A DNA stretch of 64,000 bases from IMG/VR virus record IMGVR_UViG_3300015261_000001, positions 62,001-126,000 of that record. One strand, written 5' to 3'. The position numbers and the translations under genes were made by a program. Within the stretch, counting starts at the first letter, position 1. Every line of letters begins with the position of its first letter. The notes under the pieces were generated by a model that was not told the DNA's origin, did not search any database, and was given only the letters and a program-made list of their open reading frames with translations. This document shows positions 2,197-63,016 of the stretch, one piece after another.

Positions 2197-2230
2197 TACC
2201 CTACCAGCCCTTTGCGGGGCTGGTAGGGTA
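2197..2230. terminator. Hairpin between convergent genes (CCCTTTGCGGGG family)
   Basis: TACCCTACCAGCCC-TTTGCG-GGGCTGGTAGGGTA. Confidence 0.85.
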
Positions 2231-8227: not shown

Positions 8228-8271
8228 CCCTACCCATTCCCTTTGCGGGGAATGGGTAGGGAGTTATGCCG
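8228..8271. terminator. Hairpin between convergent genes, followed by TTATGCCG
   Basis: CCCTACCCATTCCC-TTTGCG-GGGAATGGGTAGGG. Confidence 0.85.
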
Positions 8272-16509: not shown

Positions 16510-16543
16510 CCTACCCACCTCCCTTTGCGGGGAGGTGGGTAGG
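16510..16543. terminator. Hairpin between convergent genes
   Basis: CCTACCCACCTCCC-TTTGCG-GGGAGGTGGGTAGG. Confidence 0.85.
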
Positions 16544-44943: not shown

Positions 44944-45930
44944 TTACAACACCATGCCCAGGCTGTTCGAGCCAGTGCTGACGTCTTTCTGCTTGGTGTA
45001 GTCGACAGCCACTTTGGACTTGGCTTCATCGACGCCTTCGATTTCTTCTTGCAACGCGGCCAGAGCGTCGCCGTGGTCCAGAACGATGTGCAGCTGGGTC
45101 ATCTCTTTCGGCAGGTTGACATCTTTACCGAACACGCCGGTGGTGCGATACATCGAACCGACGAACATCGGGATGATTTCGTTGCTGGTACGGAACAGGC
45201 TGGCTACTGCGACCGGAGGCTTGCCTTCGAAGTCAGAAGAAGTCTTCTGGTCGAAGAACTGGATACGGCTCAGCGCTGGCGGAACCTTGCCGCGAGCGGA
45301 GTAGTTGAAGATACGCTTGATATCTTCGTAGTCCATTTCGGTGTTGCTGGCGTCGAACAGGATGCTCAGCAGGTTCAGGCCGCCGACGATTTCTTCGTTG
45401 ACTTCGCCGCGGGTTTTGTCGACGGTGTTCTCGTACGGGATGTAGCACATTGGAGCGCCGAGCTGGCTTTCCGCAGTTTGGTTGGCGAACGAGGTCAGGC
45501 CGCCGACGGAGTTTTCTTTCTCGATGACCGAGGTATGATCGGAAACCAAGCACAGTACTGCAACGTGGCCAGCTTGGATCAGCAGACGAGCAACCAGTAC
45601 AGCGAGCATGCTGCCGGTACCGCCAGCGGTGTTCGAGATGATGACGTTGTAGCGACCGGCTTTGTGTTTCTTGATCACGGCTTCAACGAAAGGGATGGCC
45701 TTTTCGAAGTTGACCGATTTGTCCTTACCGCTACCCAGCGCACCTTCGATGCGTTCAACAACGAACTGGTCGGCGCTGCCGTTTTTGTCGCTGGAATCCA
45801 GACCGATGAAGCGGGCGTTTTTGTTGCCCAGGGTTTTGGCGCCTTTCTTCAATTCGAGAGACAGGTTGATCCCGGTACCGCCACAAGCCCAGTAAGTGAT
45901 GTCGGAAAAGTTTTCGGTGGTCTTAGACAT
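44944..45930 (-). CDS. phuZ: PhuZ tubulin
   Basis: ACGGTGIN, LDSS, GSGKD, tubulin signature AGGTGS, T7-loop-like MDYEDI, 328 aa. Confidence 0.95.
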   Translation of the reverse strand: MSKTTENFSDITYWACGGTGINLSLELKKGAKTLGNKNARFIGLDSSDKNGSADQFVVERIEGALGSGKDKSVNFEKAIPFVEAVIKKHKAGRYNVIISNTAGGTGSMLAVLVARLLIQAGHVAVLCLVSDHTSVIEKENSVGGLTSFANQTAESQLGAPMCYIPYENTVDKTRGEVNEEIVGGLNLLSILFDASNTEMDYEDIKRIFNYSARGKVPPALSRIQFFDQKTSSDFEGKPPVAVASLFRTSNEIIPMFVGSMYRTTGVFGKDVNLPKEMTQLHIVLDHGDALAALQEEIEGVDEAKSKVAVDYTKQKDVSTGSNSLGMVL

Positions 45931-45998
45931 GAACGAGACTCTCTATATGAGTACATGAAATTGGAGCAAAGCTAAATACTGTTCGCTTTACTAATCAA

Positions 45999-46015
45999 AT
46001 AATTTAGGTCTGAAA
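45999..46015 (-). promoter_or_regulatory. Early promoter motif
   Basis: TTTCAGACCTAAATTAT upstream of phuZ. Confidence 0.7.
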
Positions 46016-46041
46016 TATTCCAGTCCAGTTTTGTCTCCGGC

Positions 46042-46182
46042 ATAAAAATAAACCCCAGCAGACCCGAACGAAGGGGGTGAGCCTGCCAGGGCATCTCAAG
46101 TGAGATAAATTGCCTGTAAGGAGAACATCACCGCCAAACCACCTGAGAACCATGGCCAGGTCAACAAAGCGGTACTGACGGT
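46042..46182 (-). ncRNA. Candidate small RNA 2
   Basis: No ORF in the track. Several stem-loops. The terminal stem pairs fully only with G-U on the minus strand and is followed by a U tract. Confidence 0.45.
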
Positions 46183-46203
46183 ATAAGATATCCTCTTCGG
46201 GTG

Positions 46204-46415
46204 AAAAATAAAAACGCGAAATAGAACCTTACCCCAGCAACCCGAAGGAAGCTGGGGTAAGGGTGGGGGAATTTGTAGGCAACTTCCTCGTAGGAAAGAC
46301 AGAGATAACCTAAACCGAAGAAGGTGTGAGCGGTGCTCCCCCTAACCTACTCACGAAACACAACCACAAAACGGGCGTAAACCGAAACTGCTGCGACACA
46401 ATCCACGAGGTTCAC
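46204..46415 (-). ncRNA. Candidate small RNA 1 (or long structured 3' UTR)
   Basis: Begins at a TATG late-start motif (46415-46418). Ends in a cUUCGg-capped hairpin (46227-46262) plus U tract. Confidence 0.45.
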
Positions 46416-46427
46416 ATACAATGAACA

Positions 46428-47090
46428 CTAGAGGAACTCCGCATACTCTTCGTTCTGCAACAACTCACGCAGATCGTTAAGTTGAGTACGGATTTCTTCA
46501 TCGCTGCTAACGGCCGTGTTGAGGATGTCGCGCATGTCGGAGATAAGGTTGGACAAAGTAGCGGTGACAGGTTCGTCCTCGCGCCAATGCACTACCTTAC
46601 CTTTCCATGCCTCCCAGACCTGTACACGACCACCGGTATGCGAGTCGTATTTGATCGCAGCCTTTACCGCATCTTCCGCTGGTTTGCCAATTGACATAAC
46701 AGCGTCGGCCAATACCGCACCGCTACCGATGGCATATGGACCGGTAACAATGAAGATGTTGGTGTTGGTTGCATGCTCACCGCTCTTGTAATCCCAGCAG
46801 AGCACTTCTCCGTTCTTACCGACCGCCAGCAATTGAAAGCTGGCATCGAGGTCATCCATAACCGTATCGACAGTAACACCCTTGGCCAATTCCTGCTTGA
46901 TGCGCTGTGCCAAGAGCGTATCGCCGCACAAACCAAAGGCTGCAATTTCCACGTTGTTGATGTACCACGTTACATCAGGGTGAGCGATAAAGAGTCGTCG
47001 CGATGCTTCTTGGCGACTTTTCTCATCTTCTTCATCCGATGAATGTGAATCACTTGCCAGGTTCTTGCCGTCCCACGCTACAGTTGACAT
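46428..47090 (-). CDS. HslV/proteasome-beta (Ntn-hydrolase)-like protein with non-canonical catalytic residues
   Basis: (M)STVAWDG..LASDS, GLCG, AIGSGA, DSHTGG. Ser at position 1 and Arg at the Lys33-equivalent position. Confidence 0.85.
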   Translation of the reverse strand: MSTVAWDGKNLASDSHSSDEEDEKSRQEASRRLFIAHPDVTWYINNVEIAAFGLCGDTLLAQRIKQELAKGVTVDTVMDDLDASFQLLAVGKNGEVLCWDYKSGEHATNTNIFIVTGPYAIGSGAVLADAVMSIGKPAEDAVKAAIKYDSHTGGRVQVWEAWKGKVVHWREDEPVTATLSNLISDMRDILNTAVSSDEEIRTQLNDLRELLQNEEYAEFL

Positions 47091-47108: not shown

Positions 47109-47792
47109 TTAGTGGGTGAGTTGTGGGGCTTTCTCCGACTCTTCCTCAGCTGGTGGGGAAGGGAGCGGATGCATGTCCCGGGTGATGTCTTTGATCAAGC
47201 TGGTCAATTGCTCGATGGACATATCGCCCACCTTGCTACCAACTTCCTTGATGTTGACTTCTGGAGGCGCTGGGCGGGTGCTCAGCACTTCTGGAATAGG
47301 TGGCAGATTGAAGATCTGCAAATCACCACCACAGCTGATGTCCAGCTTGATGGCAGCCTTAACGCCTGCTTGAGCGCGACCTTTCTTGCCGATCTCCATT
47401 TGGGAGTAAGCATAAGGCGCGCCGCTACCTACAGCCACCGGCGGATCCATTGGGATACACACTACGTCCTGCTTGCCAGTACGAGCAGGGTGACCGCTGA
47501 TGACGTAGCAGGAGCCGTTCTCCAGAACACACAGAGCATCGAAGCTCAGATCGATTTCAGGTTGCAGTACCGAACGGTAGGTAATGCCCTTTTGCAGCAT
47601 CTCCCGAACGTAAGGAATCGCAGTAGCGCCACCAGCAAACCCGTAAGCCAGTACCTTTACCCCGTTGATTTCCCAGTACTCGTCTTCTTTGGGTGTAAAC
47701 AGTTTCTGGCCACCAGCAGGCAACTTCATATCAGCCATGGTCATTTGGCTGTCGGTTACCAATTCTTGGCCATCATAAGCAACTACAGTCAT
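47109..47792 (-). CDS. HslV/proteasome-beta (Ntn-hydrolase)-like protease
   Basis: (M)TVVAYDG..LVTDSQ..QKLF (Thr1, with Asp-Lys spacing of 16 as in HslV), GFAG, AVGSGA, DISCGG. Confidence 0.88.
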   Translation of the reverse strand: MTVVAYDGQELVTDSQMTMADMKLPAGGQKLFTPKEDEYWEINGVKVLAYGFAGGATAIPYVREMLQKGITYRSVLQPEIDLSFDALCVLENGSCYVISGHPARTGKQDVVCIPMDPPVAVGSGAPYAYSQMEIGKKGRAQAGVKAAIKLDISCGGDLQIFNLPPIPEVLSTRPAPPEVNIKEVGSKVGDMSIEQLTSLIKDITRDMHPLPSPPAEEESEKAPQLTH

Positions 47793-47871
47793 CGTTATTC
47801 TCCTTCGTTCTATTCAAAAGGTACGCGTACAGCAAAAATCGGTATACCATATCGCTATTAGTATCAAACTA

Positions 47872-47888
47872 ATGATGTAGGTTTCAAA
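47872..47888 (-). promoter_or_regulatory. Early promoter motif
   Basis: TTTGAAACCTACATCAT upstream of the HslV-like pair. Confidence 0.65.
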
Positions 47889-47938
47889 TTCCCTGAGTGC
47901 ATAATAAACCCTACCCATTCCTTTTCAGGGAATGAGTG

Positions 47939-48143
47939 TTTTAAGGTTTGTATTTATAATAACTATATTTCTTTAAGTTATTTTTTATTTTGTGCATAGG
48001 CCCTACGGGCCTAGGTAAAGCAAGAACAAGAGCAAAGCAAGTTAACTACGTTAACCAGTCTAATCCTCCCCCAGAGTAATCCTTATTCCGTTCCGTCTCC
48101 CGAAGGGATACTCCACTACATAAGTCTTACTCTTACCCCCTCC
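47939..48143 (-). other. AT-rich tract plus three DNA-type hairpins; candidate origin or packaging element
   Basis: AT tract 47939-47991. Hairpins at 47997-48013, 48041-48055 and 48073-48133. Confidence 0.45.
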
Positions 48144-48248
48144 TTGAAAAAATCAACAATTGCAGAGGTAAGACATACAATACAAATCAGTTGAAGAAAA
48201 ACCATGCGATGTTATGATCCCTTTAACTAACCATCGGAGCGTGTCTAG

Positions 48249-49094
48249 ATGAACTGTGTGGATTACGCAATCGAGCGAGTGCAGAATAGTGATATCGACG
48301 AATACCTACTGAAGCTTGCTTTTGAAAACCCTAACGCCAACTACCAAGGGAACTGGTACGGTCAAGGGAACCTTACCACCGTAGCTCAAGGTATCCGCGA
48401 ACGAGTGATTCACAAGACTTGCCTGCCAGCCAGTAACTGCAACGGCGGCAAGACTGAGTTGATCGACTTGGGCGGTTCCATGATGCGCGGGTTGGGTAAC
48501 GGTTGTATTGAAGTCAACGTTCCTGAGATCACTACTCGGGGTGCGAAGATCATCAGCGTCACGGAGGTTTATCTCGGCAGCATGCAATCGGCTACCGGGC
48601 AACTCGGTATGGGCGTGAACGAGAACTCCACTTGTGGTGTTGGTTCTCTGAACTCGATGTTGGGCGGCATGATTGACGCGCTGGCTCCAAGTGCTTCGAT
48701 GCAAACCACTTACACCGACGTGCACATGACCGGTAACAACTGTTTCGTGATCTTTGGTATCAACATGGGGACTTACTCCATGACGGCCAAAGTAATCCTG
48801 GAATACGACGAAGGCATGAGTTCGATTCACCCTCGTCACTGGGAGAACTTTGCAGAGTTGGTGGAATGGGCTGTTAAGGCTCACATCTACCGTGTCTGCA
48901 AACGCCCTACTCAAGAAGCAGTGTATCGCTCGGGTGTTCCGCTGGAAGGTATCCGCGATGACATCATGGAGTACCGTGATGCGTGGCAGGGCTACAAAGA
49001 CTACCTGAAGGACACTTGGAGAGCCTGCATGGCTTGGAGCGACAAACAGGCGGTACATGAAGGTATCCGCATGTCGGTGCCGAGGAGAATGTAA
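48249..49094 (+). CDS. Conserved hypothetical, probable virion protein
   Basis: 281 aa, SD GGAG, TATG upstream, TAATG coupling to the next gene. Confidence 0.65.
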   Translation: MNCVDYAIERVQNSDIDEYLLKLAFENPNANYQGNWYGQGNLTTVAQGIRERVIHKTCLPASNCNGGKTELIDLGGSMMRGLGNGCIEVNVPEITTRGAKIISVTEVYLGSMQSATGQLGMGVNENSTCGVGSLNSMLGGMIDALAPSASMQTTYTDVHMTGNNCFVIFGINMGTYSMTAKVILEYDEGMSSIHPRHWENFAELVEWAVKAHIYRVCKRPTQEAVYRSGVPLEGIRDDIMEYRDAWQGYKDYLKDTWRACMAWSDKQAVHEGIRMSVPRRM

Positions 49095-51139: not shown

Positions 51140-51186
51140 TAACCCTCCCAGCCCTTTGCGGGGCTGGGAGGGTTAGCCTTATGCCG
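51140..51186. terminator. Hairpin between convergent genes, followed by TTATGCCG
   Basis: TAACCCTCCCAGCCC-TTTGCG-GGGCTGGGAGGGTTA. Confidence 0.85.
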
Positions 51187-54100
51187 CTCTACGAAGTTGC
51201 AGGTGTCGTTTATTCCGTTCCAGTTTAGCGTCGTCGATGATACTGTCGATCGTCATCAGGCGAGACTGTTCTGGTGGCAGGAGTTTAACGAGTTTACGGA
51301 TTTCAGCTTCCAGTCGCAGCGCCAACAGGTTGTCGTTGGTAGTCAACAACTCATCGGTCAACTGAGCAACTTTGGCCTTCACCTTGCCCATGAACTGAAC
51401 CACATGCGGTTCCATCGCTGGAGCAGCGCTAGGGTTGTTCTCGTTCAAGATGTTGCGGGTCTCTGTCAGAGCAATACCCGGCGGAATACCGTAAAGGGAT
51501 TTGTTCATCCCCAGCTTAATAAACCAGTAACTGAGAAGCCACGCGATAACCAAGTCATCGTGCATTTTCTTGTCGTGGTCTATTCGATCGCCTCGAGTTT
51601 TCAAGTTGATCAGCTCGTCTGCCAGTTTCGGATAGTTCAAACCGTAACCGGTGTTGCCCACCGCTTCCATGATCAGACCATACAGGGTGTCCCGAGAAGT
51701 CTTGGTCGTCACAAACCCGAAGTGTTGCTTGTACTTCAGGTAGAAGTTCTTGGTGCGGTTACTGAAGGTAGTGCGGCGGATCTCTTCGTACTCGTTTTCA
51801 TGGTTAACGGTGTCTTGATAGATCGCGTTGTAAATCCGTTGGAACGGATCCATGCCTTTAGCAGGCAACATAATCAGCAGACTGTCGATCATGTGGTGAG
51901 CGTAGTTACGCTCAATGACCAGCAAGCTGTTCTTGATTACGTCCAGCAGGTCCACCAGGATGTTGGTGACGTTATCCAAGAAGGTCAGTGCGTAGCGACC
52001 TACTCCTACCACCTTACCGGTCCTCATACTTCGAATGATGATGGTGCAGGCGTCCTTGTTGATTGCCGACGAAGTATCACAACCGATCAAGAAGAAGTCG
52101 TTGTGTTCCTTCTTGCTCATCTCCACCAGCTCTTGCTGCGTCACAAAGAAGTCCATGTACAACTGGCTGTCTTTGTACTCCTTGCTCCAAACCACCTCCC
52201 GCTTCATGTTGTTGATAGCTTCACGAGTTACGTCGTCAAACAGGCGGTTCTCACCGTCCTCTACCCACATGAGCAGCAAGTCGATCTTCGCCTTGGCCAA
52301 GCTCAAGCTAAGTTCGTCGATAACTTCCTTCACCCAGGTTTTGTCTTTACCCAGTTGCAGGTAGTTATAAACCATACTGACCGACGGAGACGTGGTCTCT
52401 TTCGGAGACGCCCGGATTAGGCGTTGTTTCAGATGGCTCTCACCGAACGAGTCGAAGAAGCTTTCACGCCACTCGGTTGCAGTCATCAGACGCTTGAACA
52501 TGAAATCACCGCTAGGGTGCAGTGTCGTGTTCGGCGTAGTGATGTGGTTAATACCGTACGGCAACCCAGCAACTCGGCAGTTGCTCATTTCTGTCAGTGC
52601 CGAAGGCGCGCAACCGTCGATGATGGTCTCAATGAAGCTGATGTAAGCAGACTCATCATAGTTGGTGGTGCCTACCCGGAGACCCCGTCCCAAGTCACCA
52701 GCTTGCGCCTGACTTTGTTGCGGAACGTTAACGTACATAGTGTTGATTTTGTCTTCACCGAAAGCTTTGTACGTCAGGGAAGTACCAGCGTCCTTGTCCT
52801 TGTAGCTTGAGTTGATCAAGTACTTGGGGATACTGTTCCGAATGGTCTTGATGGCGTTGATGAACTGAGCGCGGTTGTCAGACTTCAGTGTAATCAGGTG
52901 AGAGGTGTAACCCCGACCCATGATGTACGTCAACCAGAAGTTGATTACCTGCACCGCCACAGTGTTGTGGGTCACCAAGAACTCATCGGTGATGTACAGG
53001 TGTTCTACCGCGTCCACTTCAATACACGTGCACTCGTCGTCACCGGCATACTTGATGTCGGTAATGAACAGGGCGTTGGTGGTGTAAACTGGTTTCGGTT
53101 TTTCCGCAAGGTAGAAGTAGTCAATAGCTTCCGGCAGGGTAATAGTCACGCCCGTTTTGGTCTTCTTGGCGGTACCGCCAAAGCTCCGAGCGAGGTAACT
53201 CAATTGACCTGTCATAGCACGCCCTACAGCCACGTGCGCCGAATCCTTCCCTACCGTAGCCCCAACGTCGAGAAACGCGTGGAGCAGCTTCTTACGGTCT
53301 TCTAGAGCACCTTCAAGGTACTCCGGCGCGGCACCGTACTCCGCGTTCACCGAAAACGGCTTTCCATCCGCTCGCCAGAGGATAGTGGCGTCCTGATTAC
53401 CAGCAACTTCCACACCCATTGGCAGATTGACGTACAGATATTGAAGCTGTGCTGCATTGAGACCCTGAAGGTGGATCTCCTTACCCACTTCCTCACCTTG
53501 CAGTAACAGACCCAGAACATAAGGGTCGATTGGCAGCTGTTGCTTAGGACCATCCTCGGCATCAATCAACGGCAGTTGGAGCTTGGCACCTTTCTTTAGA
53601 CGCTCAATCAAGCCTGAAGTGGTGTAGTCATCCCAATAAGCTTTGCCTTCATGCTTGTCGGAATGGTCTCGGGCTGTCCACAAGTGTTCAGTGCCCACAT
53701 CGGTATAACGACCATCACTGGTGTACACGCGATATAGCCGCTTGGTCCCTTGTGGGTGAATGCCGATAACTGTTGCTTCATTGCCGTAACGGTCAACGAT
53801 GGCTTCGCCTACTTGCAAGTCACCGATCTTCTTCCAGGTATCTTTAGTCGTGATGTTGCGACCAAGGTCCTTTGTTTTAATCCGCACCTTTGAACTGTTA
53901 CGCTGCAACTTGCCCTGCTGACGAGGCATGATCATGTACGTGGTAACGTGGTTCAGGTAAGACCACATGAAACTGATGTTACCGCGGTTAGCACGAAATC
54001 CGTGAGTCGGACCCAGACGACAGACTTCTCGCAAGAAGTACCAGAAGTTGGTTCGGGTCTCCTGAGCGATCATGGTGATCTGCTCGTTGGTCAGCTCTTC

Positions 54101-54451
54101 GGAATAAGGATCCAGTCCTTGCAACAACGGGTTGTTCAGTTGAAGCAAGAAGTAGTAGTTCTTGATACCTTGGCGACGGAAGATTTCAGCAGTCCGCAAG
54201 AACGAGGTGTTTTTCGTTCCAAGGTCAGGGGCGGCGCTGTACAGGTGGAAGTCTTTCAAGAAGCGAACAGTCTTGATGCCCCACAAGCTGTCTTCGTTGT
54301 AATGAGCCAGCAAAAGCTCATCTTCGGATCGACTCTCTGGATCGATACGCTTCTTCCGATCGTCGATCAACGTCTTAGGGAGGTTGTTGCTTCCTAAGTA
54401 GTCGACCAACTTTTTTGCAAAGAGAAGATTCTCATTGTCAGTTGTGTCCAT
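51179..54451 (-). CDS. terL: Terminase large subunit with intein
   Basis: Walker A PRQQGK|TV interrupted by an intein, GRG, Walker B NYDESAY, TTP, nuclease IGCDTS..VIERN..HDDLVIAW. Confidence 0.95.
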   Translation of the reverse strand: MDTTDNENLLFAKKLVDYLGSNNLPKTLIDDRKKRIDPESRSEDELLLAHYNEDSLWGIKTVRFLKDFHLYSAAPDLGTKNTSFLRTAEIFRRQGIKNYYFLLQLNNPLLQGLDPYSEELTNEQITMIAQETRTNFWYFLREVCRLGPTHGFRANRGNISFMWSYLNHVTTYMIMPRQQGKLQRNSSKVRIKTKDLGRNITTKDTWKKIGDLQVGEAIVDRYGNEATVIGIHPQGTKRLYRVYTSDGRYTDVGTEHLWTARDHSDKHEGKAYWDDYTTSGLIERLKKGAKLQLPLIDAEDGPKQQLPIDPYVLGLLLQGEEVGKEIHLQGLNAAQLQYLYVNLPMGVEVAGNQDATILWRADGKPFSVNAEYGAAPEYLEGALEDRKKLLHAFLDVGATVGKDSAHVAVGRAMTGQLSYLARSFGGTAKKTKTGVTITLPEAIDYFYLAEKPKPVYTTNALFITDIKYAGDDECTCIEVDAVEHLYITDEFLVTHNTVAVQVINFWLTYIMGRGYTSHLITLKSDNRAQFINAIKTIRNSIPKYLINSSYKDKDAGTSLTYKAFGEDKINTMYVNVPQQSQAQAGDLGRGLRVGTTNYDESAYISFIETIIDGCAPSALTEMSNCRVAGLPYGINHITTPNTTLHPSGDFMFKRLMTATEWRESFFDSFGESHLKQRLIRASPKETTSPSVSMVYNYLQLGKDKTWVKEVIDELSLSLAKAKIDLLLMWVEDGENRLFDDVTREAINNMKREVVWSKEYKDSQLYMDFFVTQQELVEMSKKEHNDFFLIGCDTSSAINKDACTIIIRSMRTGKVVGVGRYALTFLDNVTNILVDLLDVIKNSLLVIERNYAHHMIDSLLIMLPAKGMDPFQRIYNAIYQDTVNHENEYEEIRRTTFSNRTKNFYLKYKQHFGFVTTKTSRDTLYGLIMEAVGNTGYGLNYPKLADELINLKTRGDRIDHDKKMHDDLVIAWLLSYWFIKLGMNKSLYGIPPGIALTETRNILNENNPSAAPAMEPHVVQFMGKVKAKVAQLTDELLTTNDNLLALRLEAEIRKLVKLLPPEQSRLMTIDSIIDDAKLERNKRHLQLRRAA
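52964..53908 (-). mobile_element. Class-3-type intein (315 aa) in the terL Walker A, with degenerate LAGLIDADG domain
   Basis: WKKIGDLQVGE, block B EHLW, block F CTCIEVD, block G VTHN|T. Removing it restores PRQQGKTVAV. Confidence 0.9.
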
Positions 54452-62975: not shown

Positions 62976-63016
62976 CCTACCCCACCCCTTACGGGGTGGG
63001 GTAGGGGTTTATGCCG
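62976..63016. terminator. Hairpin between convergent genes, followed by TTATGCCG
   Basis: CCTACCCCACCCC-TTAC-GGGGTGGGGTAGG. Confidence 0.85.

What the first reader, a model, noticed from the sequence alone, without database searches (positions are those of the whole stretch)
47939..48143. Strand-specific ssDNA-structure cluster beside an AT-rich tract: candidate replication origin or packaging signal
Seen between divergent operons: a ~50-bp very AT-rich tract and two perfect hairpins that both have cGTAg triloops on the minus strand (TAGGCCC-GTA-GGGCCTA; GTTAAC-GTA-GTTAAC), separated by A/G-rich CAAG repeats. A 61-nt hairpin reads on the minus strand AGAGTAA[GA]CTTAT[GTA]GT[GGA]GT[A]TCCC-TTC-GGGA[G]AC[GGA]AC[GGA]ATAAG[GA]TTACTCT, so its interruptions are tandem GA/GA, GTA/GGA, GGA/GGA and A/G. 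Known: cGNAg triloops, tandem sheared GA pairs and (GNA)2 zippers are especially stable in DNA. Inference: selection for folded single-stranded DNA, such as a priming or helicase-loading site. To my knowledge, origins of nucleus-forming phages are not defined.
Basis: partly seen in the sequence, partly recalled or inferred. Interest (0 to 1): 0.75.

Follow-up and report, generated by a model that had tools for sequence, protein, structure and literature searches.

The report
Structured non-coding RNA gene in jumbo phage
The hairpin cluster and AT-rich tract are real and conserved in EL-like nucleus-forming phages, but they most likely form the body of a previously undescribed ~230-285-nt structured RNA made from the minus strand rather than a bare DNA origin, although an RNA-primed origin is not excluded.

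Summary
The window belongs to a 238-kb EL-like phage that encodes PhuZ. The AT tract is the most AT-rich stretch of the genome. H1 and H2 are two of only three c(GNA)g triloop hairpins in 238 kb.

Across 10-11 related phages, H1 and the 61-nt hairpin H3 covary strongly. They keep GNA loops and purine GNA/GNA internal loops on the minus strand only.

The region looks like a transcription unit on that strand. A phiKZ-type late promoter motif (TATG, +1 G at 48174) lies 36-46 nt from H3 in 7 of 8 lineages. A bidirectional terminator-like hairpin (47913-47937) closes the unit, just upstream of the early promoter of the HslV/PhuZ operon.

In phage EL, one wastewater metatranscriptome contig covers exactly the homologous block (264 nt). 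It starts on the G of that TATG and ends inside the AT tract, with no coverage of the flanking genes.

My best reading is a new structured ncRNA of unknown function. However, the loop motifs are the DNA-stable kind, so an RNA-primed, R-loop-type origin remains a live minority reading. GC skew gives no support for an origin.

The parts
47870..47889 (-). Weak copy of the early (virion-RNAP type) promoter motif, driving the HslV-like/PhuZ operon leftwards. It is a neighbour of the RNA unit, not part of it.
   Evidence: On the minus strand it reads ATTTGAAACCTACATCATTA. This matches the motif annotated as a 'putative phage promoter' in EL, ATTTGAAACCTAAATTATT. It also matches a genome-wide motif found 21 times, always in this orientation. 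The window copy scores below my PWM cut-off; the relatives carry strong copies.
47913..47937 (.). Bidirectional terminator-like hairpin with an A-run before it and a T-run after it on both strands. It is a degenerate member of the phage's CCCTACCC.../...GGGTAGGG terminator family and the likely end of the RNA unit.
   Evidence: The consensus scan calls it on both strands. It resembles the roughly 30 long terminator hairpins of the genome. A hairpin followed by GGGTAAGGGTTTAT is conserved at this position in relatives.
47939..47996 (-). AT-rich tract, transcribed as the A/U-rich 3' part of the RNA.
   Evidence: It is the most AT-rich window of the genome. The homologous tract is also the top 70-bp window in EL and in G002. 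The EL RNA contig ends in the middle of the EL tract.
47997..48013 (-). H1: 7-bp hairpin with a c(GUA)g triloop on the minus strand.
   Evidence: Covaries in 11 relatives: 8 of 9 pairs have compensatory changes, and 0 of 500 shuffles reach the score. The closing C-G pair is invariant. The loop is GNA on the minus strand in 10 of 11.
48014..48040 (-). Linker that is C/U-rich on the minus strand and A/G-rich with CAAG repeats on the plus strand.
   Evidence: Read directly from the sequence. A purine-rich linker sits at the same place in relatives, but its sequence is not conserved.
48041..48055 (-). H2: 6-bp hairpin with a c(GUA)g triloop on the minus strand.
   Evidence: Read directly from the sequence. 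It is one of only three such hairpins in the genome. A small hairpin is present here in relatives, but its loop type varies: UUUA, GAA, UCC.
48065..48072 (-). G-rich box: GGGGGAGG on the minus strand, CCTCCCCC on the plus strand. It flanks H3.
   Evidence: Conserved in all 10 H3-bearing relatives.
48073..48133 (-). H3: 61-nt rod hairpin. An outer 7-bp stem is followed by short Watson-Crick steps separated by symmetric purine GNA/GNA or GA/GA internal loops.
   Evidence: - 90.4% of cells are paired, against 69% in shuffles and 31-40% in slid controls.
- 15 of 18 pairs show compensatory changes; 0 of 500 shuffles reach the score.
- Internal loops are 89% purine on the minus strand.
- There are 6 G-U pairs on the minus strand against 2 that would be G-U on the plus strand.
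- The minus-strand fold is 6.8-14.6 kcal/mol more stable in all 10 sequences.
- It is single-copy in three genomes.
48134..48143 (-). Second G-rich box: GGAGGGGGTA on the minus strand, TACCCCCTCC on the plus strand.
   Evidence: Conserved in all 10 relatives. Its proposed pairing with the C/U-rich 5' leader (H4) is not significantly supported.
48144..48177 (-). 5' leader of the RNA plus the late-type promoter core TATG (48177 to 48174). The predicted +1 G is at 48174.
   Evidence: - CATA on the plus strand lies 36-46 nt to the right of H3 in 7 of 8 lineages.
- In phiKZ, late promoters are TATG with the final G as the start site (PMC4666361).
- The EL RNA contig begins exactly on that G.
48213..48216 (+). 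Divergent late-type promoter core TATG (context GATGTTATGA) for the virion-protein gene at 48249. It shows that the hairpin block lies outside that gene's short leader.
   Evidence: The motif ATG[C/T]TAT[G/A] recurs in the genome. It is conserved about 35-50 nt upstream of the homologous gene in relatives, including RisingSun and FishSpeaker.

Best explanation
The cluster is the body of a non-coding RNA gene read from the minus strand.

Proposed unit:
- Transcription by the phage's non-virion RNA polymerase starts at the G of a late-type TATG promoter (+1 = 48174).
- It runs leftwards through a G-rich box, the purine-zipper rod H3, a second G-rich box, H2, a C/U-rich linker and the GNA-capped hairpin H1.
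- It continues into the A/U-rich tract.
- It ends either inside that tract (as in EL) or at the bidirectional terminator at 47913-47937. This gives an RNA of about 230-285 nt, just upstream of the early promoter of the HslV/PhuZ operon.

Shown: the structure is conserved by covariation, the strand is the minus strand, the promoter motif is conserved, and an RNA contig with these ends exists for EL.

Inferred: how it works. I think it most likely acts as a stable folded RNA. H3 and the GNA-capped hairpins would be recognised by a phage or host protein, and the A/U-rich 3' tail would serve as a single-stranded handle. It would act either in trans or as a short leader RNA released ahead of the HslV/PhuZ operon.
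For: - Context: a PhuZ-encoding, EL-like jumbo phage. The arrangement HslV(-) | intergenic region | virion gene(+) is conserved in EL and in more than 20 metagenomic relatives.
- H3 covariation and strand asymmetry.
- H1 covariation, with a GNA loop on the minus strand in 10 of 11 relatives.
- TATG on the minus strand at a fixed 36-46 nt from H3 in 7 of 8 lineages. In phiKZ, TATG with G as +1 is the nvRNAP late promoter (PMC4666361).
- EL locus: a wastewater metatranscriptomic run gives one 272-nt contig covering only L003:3629-3892. Depth is zero over 5 kb of flanking genes.
- The right end of that contig is exactly the +1 G. Its left end is a discrete end carrying an 8-nt fold-back.
- Six further wastewater RNA-labelled runs (three studies in all) hold a similar 0.18-0.27 share of the 851-nt query.
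- A terminator-like hairpin closes the unit.
- No conserved ORF: nothing longer than 34 aa.
- The plus-strand gene has its own TATG promoter 33 nt upstream of its ATG.
Against: - The RNA evidence comes from EL, not from this phage. It rests on one contig without strand information, in a run chosen because it holds the query.
- The loop motifs, c(GNA)g triloops and GNA/GNA zippers, are known as exceptionally stable in DNA and much less so in RNA (PMC13037366).
- The same genome caps its terminator hairpins with GNRA tetraloops instead: 10 of 17.
- The only G-U-rich helix (H4) is not statistically supported.
- The tract being the most AT-rich site in three genomes is not explained by an RNA role.
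- No Rfam family matches.
- No function or partner has been identified.
Confidence: 0.6

Rival explanations
1. RNA-primed (R-loop) replication origin. The late-promoter transcript stays hybridised to the C-rich template boxes. The displaced minus-sense DNA strand folds into the DNA-stable GNA mini-hairpins and the H3 zipper, which holds the loop open. The RNA 3' end in the AT-rich unwinding tract then primes or loads the replisome. The analogies are the T7 primary origin, T4 oriF/oriG, ColE1 RNA II and mitochondrial CSBII (from my own knowledge).
For: - A promoter followed downstream by the most AT-rich tract of the genome, in three genomes.
- The EL RNA ends in the middle of that tract.
- G5 clusters lie on the non-template strand on both sides of H3.
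- The loop motifs are the DNA-stable kind and sit on the RNA-sense strand.
- The element is single-copy per genome.
- No origin is defined for these phages in the papers searched.
Against: - Cumulative GC skew has no turning point at the site in G000, EL or G002.
- H3 is absent from the group A genome and loci, the group C loci, RisingSun, FishSpeaker, Miami and OBP.
- Some relatives (L025, L032) lack an AT tract here.
- In group A the tract is 93-99% identical, against 63% at third codon positions of the neighbouring gene. That indicates sequence-specific selection, not mere AT-richness.
- A/U-rich RNA-DNA hybrids are weak.
- No replication data exist.
Confidence: 0.2
2. Cis-acting leader or insulator. 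The structured transcript is a regulatory leader for the HslV/PhuZ operon. It would act through attenuation or antitermination at the 47913-47937 hairpin, or by interfering with the early promoter late in infection. The small RNA would be only the terminated by-product.
For: - The unit points in the same direction as the early promoter and lies immediately upstream of it.
- In group C relatives (L007, L010, L033) the early promoter lies upstream of the homologous G-box and hairpin region, which makes that region the operon's 5' leader.
- 5'UTR-derived sRNAs made by premature termination are reported in 201phi2-1 (PMC11512511).
Against: - In EL the RNA ends discretely about 280 nt before the HslV start codon and before the terminator hairpin.
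- The operon has its own early promoter.
- The elaborate conserved H3 rod is not needed for simple attenuation.
Confidence: 0.12
3. Pure DNA element. The minus strand, when single-stranded, folds into a single-strand initiation, helicase-loading or packaging signal. Any transcription across it is incidental.
For: - GNA mini-hairpins mark G4-type and ssiA priming sites and the hairpin promoters of phage N4 (PMC13037366).
- Strand-specific conservation of GNA motifs.
- The terminase gene lies 3 kb away.
Against: - A conserved promoter and a terminator frame the block.
- The RNA contig has promoter-exact ends.
- There is no skew signal.
- The taxonomic range is narrow.
- The assembly ends in a 123-bp repeat, which I take to be an assembly overlap of a permuted genome, so it shows no fixed terminus at this site.
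Confidence: 0.06

Closest known systems
Small RNAs of phiKZ-like jumbo phages (phiKZ, 201phi2-1; PMC11512511)
   Same: A phage-encoded, short, structured transcript made by the phage's own RNA polymerase. It is delimited by a start site and a nearby terminator, is conserved by position among related jumbo phages, and has no known function.
   Different: There is no sequence or positional homology: the described conserved sRNA lies upstream of the tail gene gp182/gp277. This RNA is longer (about 230-285 nt), carries a periodic GNA/GNA purine-zipper rod, and abuts the most AT-rich tract of the genome. It has no Rfam match.
Transcription-activated phage and plasmid origins (T7 primary origin, T4 oriF/oriG, ColE1 RNA II); compared from my own knowledge
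   Same: A phage-polymerase promoter is followed downstream by an AT-rich tract. The structured transcript has its 3' end in that tract, and G-rich RNA segments could hold a hybrid.
   Different: About 180 nt of conserved structure separate the promoter from the tract. No replication evidence, skew signal or RNA-DNA junction is known. The element is not conserved across the family.
Single-strand initiation signals with GNA mini-hairpins (G4/St-1/alpha3 complementary-strand origin, RSF1010 ssiA) and N4 hairpin promoters (PMC13037366)
   Same: A cluster of strand-specific hairpins capped by c(GNA)g triloops, in a non-coding region.
   Different: Those elements act on obligatory single-stranded DNA or need a single-subunit N4-type polymerase. 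Here the genome is double-stranded, the polymerases are multisubunit, and the block is framed by a promoter and a terminator with evidence of RNA.
phi29 prohead RNA (pRNA); compared from my own knowledge
   Same: A structured phage ncRNA of similar size (174 nt). The location near head and terminase genes and the late-type promoter would suit an assembly role.
   Different: There is no sequence or structural similarity, no evidence of binding to a portal or terminase, and pRNA is known only in phi29-like podoviruses.

Membership tests
phiKZ-type late (nvRNAP) transcription unit | 5'-TATG-3' with the final G as the transcription start | tested here: met
   TATG lies on the minus strand at 48177-48174. 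It is conserved 36-46 nt from H3 in 7 of 8 lineages. The EL RNA contig starts on that G. The rule comes from PMC4666361.
phiKZ-type late (nvRNAP) transcription unit | Transcript detected in infected cells, in the window's own phage and with strand information | not testable with these tools
   Only DNA runs hold the window sequence. Reads were laid on EL, and its contigs carry no strand.
Structured ncRNA family | Secondary structure conserved by compensatory substitutions | tested here: met
   H3: 15 of 18 pairs compensatory, 0 of 500 shuffles. H1: 8 of 9 pairs, 0 of 500. H4: not supported.
Any described RNA family (Rfam 15) | Match at the gathering score | tested here: not met
   Best hits reach 16.5-17.7 bits against gathering scores of 37-47. 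There is nothing in the homologous regions of 6 relatives.
Replication origin (transcription-activated type) | Promoter with a downstream AT-rich unwinding tract | tested here: met
   The TATG promoter lies 180 nt upstream of the most AT-rich tract in three genomes.
Replication origin (transcription-activated type) | Strand-composition (GC skew) switch at the site | tested here: not met
   The extremes of cumulative skew lie elsewhere in G000, EL and G002. Skew in these genomes may simply follow transcription, so this is weak evidence.
Replication origin (transcription-activated type) | Initiation of DNA synthesis at the site (copy-number peak, RNA-DNA junctions, autonomous replication) | not testable with these tools
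   No raw reads from infected cells were available.
Packaging (pac/cos) signal | Genome termini or a terminase cleavage series at the site | not testable with these tools
   The assembly ends in a 123-bp direct repeat, which I take to be an assembly overlap of a permuted genome. Only contigs were available, not reads.
Intrinsic terminators | GC-rich hairpin followed by a T-run | tested here: not met
   H1, H2 and H3 have no T-run on either strand. Only the 47913-47937 hairpin qualifies, on both strands.
CsrA/RsmA-sequestering sRNAs (RsmY/RsmZ type) | Many GGA motifs presented in hairpin loops or single-stranded spacers | tested here: not met
   GGA is enriched on the minus strand: 10 against 4 in the EL RNA. 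However, the conserved unit is G-N-A (GGA, GAA or GUA) inside internal loops of a rod, which is a structural constraint. There is no Rfam Rsm/Csr match.
G4-type / ssiA single-strand initiation signal | Strand-specific hairpin cluster with GNA mini-hairpins | tested here: met
   The motif description comes from PMC13037366.
G4-type / ssiA single-strand initiation signal | Acts on single-stranded template DNA recognised by a primase | not testable with these tools
   No biochemical or replication-intermediate data are available.

The most novel reading that the evidence does not exclude
This locus is the first definable replication origin of a nucleus-forming jumbo phage. In this reading the nvRNAP late transcript forms a persistent R-loop, nucleated by its G5 boxes on the C-rich template. 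The displaced DNA strand locks into GNA mini-hairpins and the H3 purine zipper. DNA synthesis starts from the RNA 3' end inside the most AT-rich tract of the genome.
Probability: 0.18. Interest if true: 0.9.

Novelty: new variant of a known kind. Interest (0 to 1): 0.6.

Why it matters
Non-coding RNAs of nucleus-forming phages are barely charted, and their replication origins are undefined in the literature I could search. This locus offers a conserved, single-copy, experimentally tractable element in phage EL, which can be grown on P. aeruginosa. It has exact predicted ends and an unusual architecture: a rod of 2-bp steps alternating with GNA/GNA purine loops, plus GNA-capped hairpins.

If it is a trans-acting RNA, it is a new RNA family with an unknown protein partner. 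If it primes replication, it opens the origin question for Chimalliviridae. Either outcome can be tested directly with standard RNA mapping and deletion experiments.

Tried and rejected
- **Rfam.** Scans of the window region and of six homologous loci found no family.
- **tRNA/tmRNA.** None in the window.
- **Near-identity DNA search of phage records.** No match. The distant mode hit only the flanking gene.
- **Small ORFs.** The intergenic region holds only unconserved ORFs of 34 aa or fewer.
- **Sigma-70 promoters.** Four weak matches against 1.8 expected. These are not informative for a phage that uses its own polymerases.
- **H1 and H2 as terminators.** Rejected, because neither strand has a T-run after them.
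- **H4.** The proposed helix between the 5' C/U leader and the G-rich box is not better than shuffled or slid controls. I therefore dropped the 'G-U-rich helix proves RNA' argument.
- **RsmA/CsrA sponge.** Rejected, because the conserved unit is GNA, not GGA.
- **AT tract as a copy of the early promoter.** The match to the consensus is poor (my own reading).
- **Pattern scan of IMG/VR for the two C-rich boxes.** It returned 119+ mostly chance hits. The covariance model kept only 2, both near-identical to L012.
- **Base-pairing targets.** One 18-nt perfect complement exists to the 3' end of a gene at genome 21335-21352. The closest relative, L023, has a different linker, so this is probably chance.
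- **GC skew.** No origin signal.
- **Literature.** No EL transcriptome and no defined Chimalliviridae origin were found.

Full report
**Where the window comes from.** The window is bases 62001-126000 of a 238,193-bp IMG/VR phage record with a 123-bp terminal overlap and 50.8% G+C. The finding is flanked by these genes:
- PhuZ tubulin (44944-45930, minus strand);
- two HslV-like peptidase genes (46428-47090 and 47109-47792, minus strand);
- a conserved virion-protein gene (48249-49094, plus strand), followed by a second one;
- the large terminase (51179-54451, minus strand).

The nearest named relative is Pseudomonas phage EL, which has the same gene order and a 650-bp intergenic region at this spot.

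**The observation.** The AT tract is the most AT-rich stretch of the whole genome. Among all perfect hairpins in the 238 kb, only three are c(GNA)g triloop hairpins with stems of 6 bp or more. Two of those are H1 (47997-48013) and H2 (48041-48055), 28 nt apart and on the same strand. Folding energy alone is only mildly unusual, with z-scores of -1.6 to -2.5 on either strand, as RNA or as DNA. The case therefore rests on comparison with relatives.

**Relatives.** I fetched the homologous intergenic region from EL, 12 IMG/VR loci and 29 metagenome loci.

One sub-clade shares the full layout. It contains the window, L023, L022, EL, L024, L012/L013/L038/L048, L037/L039, L036, L035 and L027. The layout, left to right on the plus strand, is:
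- early-promoter motif;
- terminator-like hairpin;
- AT tract;
- GC hairpin H1;
- purine-rich linker;
- small hairpin H2;
- the box CCTCCCC(C);
- the long imperfect hairpin H3;
- the box ACCCCCTCC;
- a short spacer;
- the promoter of the plus-strand gene.

H3 aligns across 10 sequences and covaries strongly:
- 90.4% of cells are paired, against 69% in shuffles and 31-40% in slid controls;
- 15 of 18 pairs show compensatory changes;
- 0 of 500 shuffles reach the observed score;
- the 2-bp mini-stems at columns 31-32/57-58 and 36-37/52-53 are paired in every sequence that has letters on both sides.

H1 covaries in 11 sequences: 8 of 9 pairs, with 0 of 500 shuffles. A covariance model of H3 finds exactly one copy in the window's genome, in EL and in G002. 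It finds none in the group A genome and loci, the group C loci, RisingSun, FishSpeaker, Miami or OBP.

**Which strand.**
- H3 is 6.8-14.6 kcal/mol more stable on the minus strand in all 10 sequences.
- Non-Watson-Crick cells within its stems are G-U on the minus strand 6 times, against 2 that would be G-U on the plus strand.
- Its internal loops are 89% purine on the minus strand and follow a G-N-A opposite G-N-A pattern.
- The H1 loop is G-N-A on the minus strand in 10 of 11 relatives, with an invariant C-G closing pair.

**RNA or DNA.** The surroundings read as a transcription unit on that same strand.

*Early promoters.* A motif occurs at least 21 times in the genome, always in the same orientation. 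It reads GTAATATAGGTCTGAAAT...AAGTT on the plus strand. Its reverse complement equals the 'putative phage promoter' annotated upstream of PhuZ in EL. It also fits the three-block AT-rich early promoters of phiKZ-like phages (PMC11512511). So early transcription runs leftwards. The weak copy at 47870-47889 serves the HslV/PhuZ operon.

*A late-type promoter.* To the right of H3, CATA on the plus strand (TATG on the minus strand) sits 36-46 nt from H3 in 7 of 8 lineages. In phiKZ the late promoter of the non-virion polymerase is TATG, with the last G as +1 (PMC4666361). In the window that G is at 48174. The plus-strand gene has its own TATG, with +1 at 48216, 33 nt before its ATG. The hairpin block is therefore not its leader.

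*A terminator.* The hairpin at 47913-47937 scores as terminator-like on both strands. It belongs to the genome's family of long CCCTACCC/GGGTAGGG hairpins.

*Direct evidence for an RNA, from EL.* No RNA run holds the window's own sequence, so I spent the single read-laying run on the EL locus.
- Three runs gave low, fairly even, DNA-like depth across the 5 kb.
- One wastewater metatranscriptomic run (X18) gave a single contig, L003:3629-3892. It had zero depth on 5 kb of flanking genes.
- Those 264 nt are exactly the structured block.
- The right end of the contig is the G of the conserved TATG.
- The left end is a discrete end with an 8-nt fold-back, in the middle of the EL AT tract.
- Six further wastewater RNA-labelled runs, three studies in all, hold a similar share of the query.

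*Caveats.* The run was selected because it holds this sequence. Contigs carry no strand. The evidence is for EL, not for the window's phage.

**What remains unexplained.** c(GNA)g triloops and GNA/GNA zippers are best known as extraordinarily stable DNA motifs and are much weaker in RNA. They mark G4-type and ssiA priming sites and N4 hairpin promoters (PMC13037366). In this same genome the long terminator hairpins, which certainly act as RNA, carry GNRA tetraloops in 10 of 17 cases. The cluster is therefore a different class of hairpin.

The AT tract next to the element is the top 70-bp AT window in three of three genomes. In the group A relatives the tract plus H1 is 93-99% identical, while third codon positions of the neighbouring gene are 63% identical. 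That indicates sequence-specific selection.

These facts keep alive a model in which the transcript forms an R-loop and the displaced DNA strand, which has the same sequence as the RNA, folds. That would make this a transcription-primed origin like those of T7, T4 or ColE1 (comparison from my own knowledge). Against this model:
- there is no GC-skew signal;
- H3 has a narrow taxonomic range;
- some relatives have no AT tract at this position.

**Verdict.**
- The inference of selection for a folded single strand is right.
- The best-supported reading is a new structured ncRNA of about 230-285 nt, made late from the minus strand, with unknown function (confidence 0.6).
- Rivals: an RNA-primed origin (0.2), a cis-acting leader or insulator for the HslV/PhuZ operon (0.12), and a purely DNA-level element (0.06).

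Noticed in passing
whole genome; window copies at about 24248, 29230, 37816 and 46001: All 21 or more copies of the early-promoter motif lie in one orientation, so early transcription runs only leftwards. About 70% of crude gene calls are on the minus strand.
   Followed up: partly
window 2197-2230, 8228-8261, 16510-16543, 51140-51175, 62976-63005 and about 25 more in the genome: A family of long, perfect 12-17-bp hairpins. Their arms read CCCTACCC.../...GGGTAGGG and their loops are often TTTGCG (CGCAAA on the other strand) or GNRA. They have an A-rich left flank and a conserved TATGCCGC-like right flank, and mostly sit between convergent genes. They are probably sequence-specific phage terminators, like the motif-bearing terminators of phiKZ and 201phi2-1.
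   Followed up: partly
window 45931-46427: A second long non-coding stretch of about 500 bp between the HslV-like gene and PhuZ. It holds an early-promoter motif (about 46001) and several GC-rich hairpins with UUCG-type loops.
   Followed up: no
L019 (Klebsiella phage Miami) 1740-1960; L043: Upstream of the homologous virion gene lies a roughly 170-bp almost pure A/T tract. It is bracketed by inverted alternating GC/GT blocks (ACGCGTGCG...CGCACGCGT) and followed by AGATTTT iteron-like repeats. It shares the AATATATAAATATAT core with the group A relatives, even though the flanking protein is only 48% identical to the window's.
   Followed up: partly
L020 (Pseudomonas phage OBP) 1456-2494: About 1 kb of unannotated, GC-rich, hairpin-rich sequence lies upstream of the homologous virion gene, next to a tRNA cluster. 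It has no Rfam match.
   Followed up: no
genome 21335-21352 (outside the window) versus window 48019-48036: An 18-nt perfect complementarity exists between the C/U-rich linker of the predicted RNA and the last codons (…KQEQEQ*) of a minus-strand gene. About 0.002 such matches are expected by chance, but the match is not conserved in the closest relative.
   Followed up: partly
L037 1236-1250 versus L039 1236-1250: In two near-identical genomes the H1 triloop is inverted: GCA against TGC on the plus strand. This is the kind of loop flip produced by template switching within an inverted repeat.
   Followed up: no
window 51179-54451: The terminase ORF is 1090 aa long, but the profile matches cover only about the first 330 residues. 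The remainder is unexplained.
   Followed up: no
L018 (Pseudomonas phage vB_PQ1) 1570-2400: This EL-like record shows duplicated segments of the intergenic block and fragmented ORFs. That pattern suggests assembly errors rather than biology.
   Followed up: no
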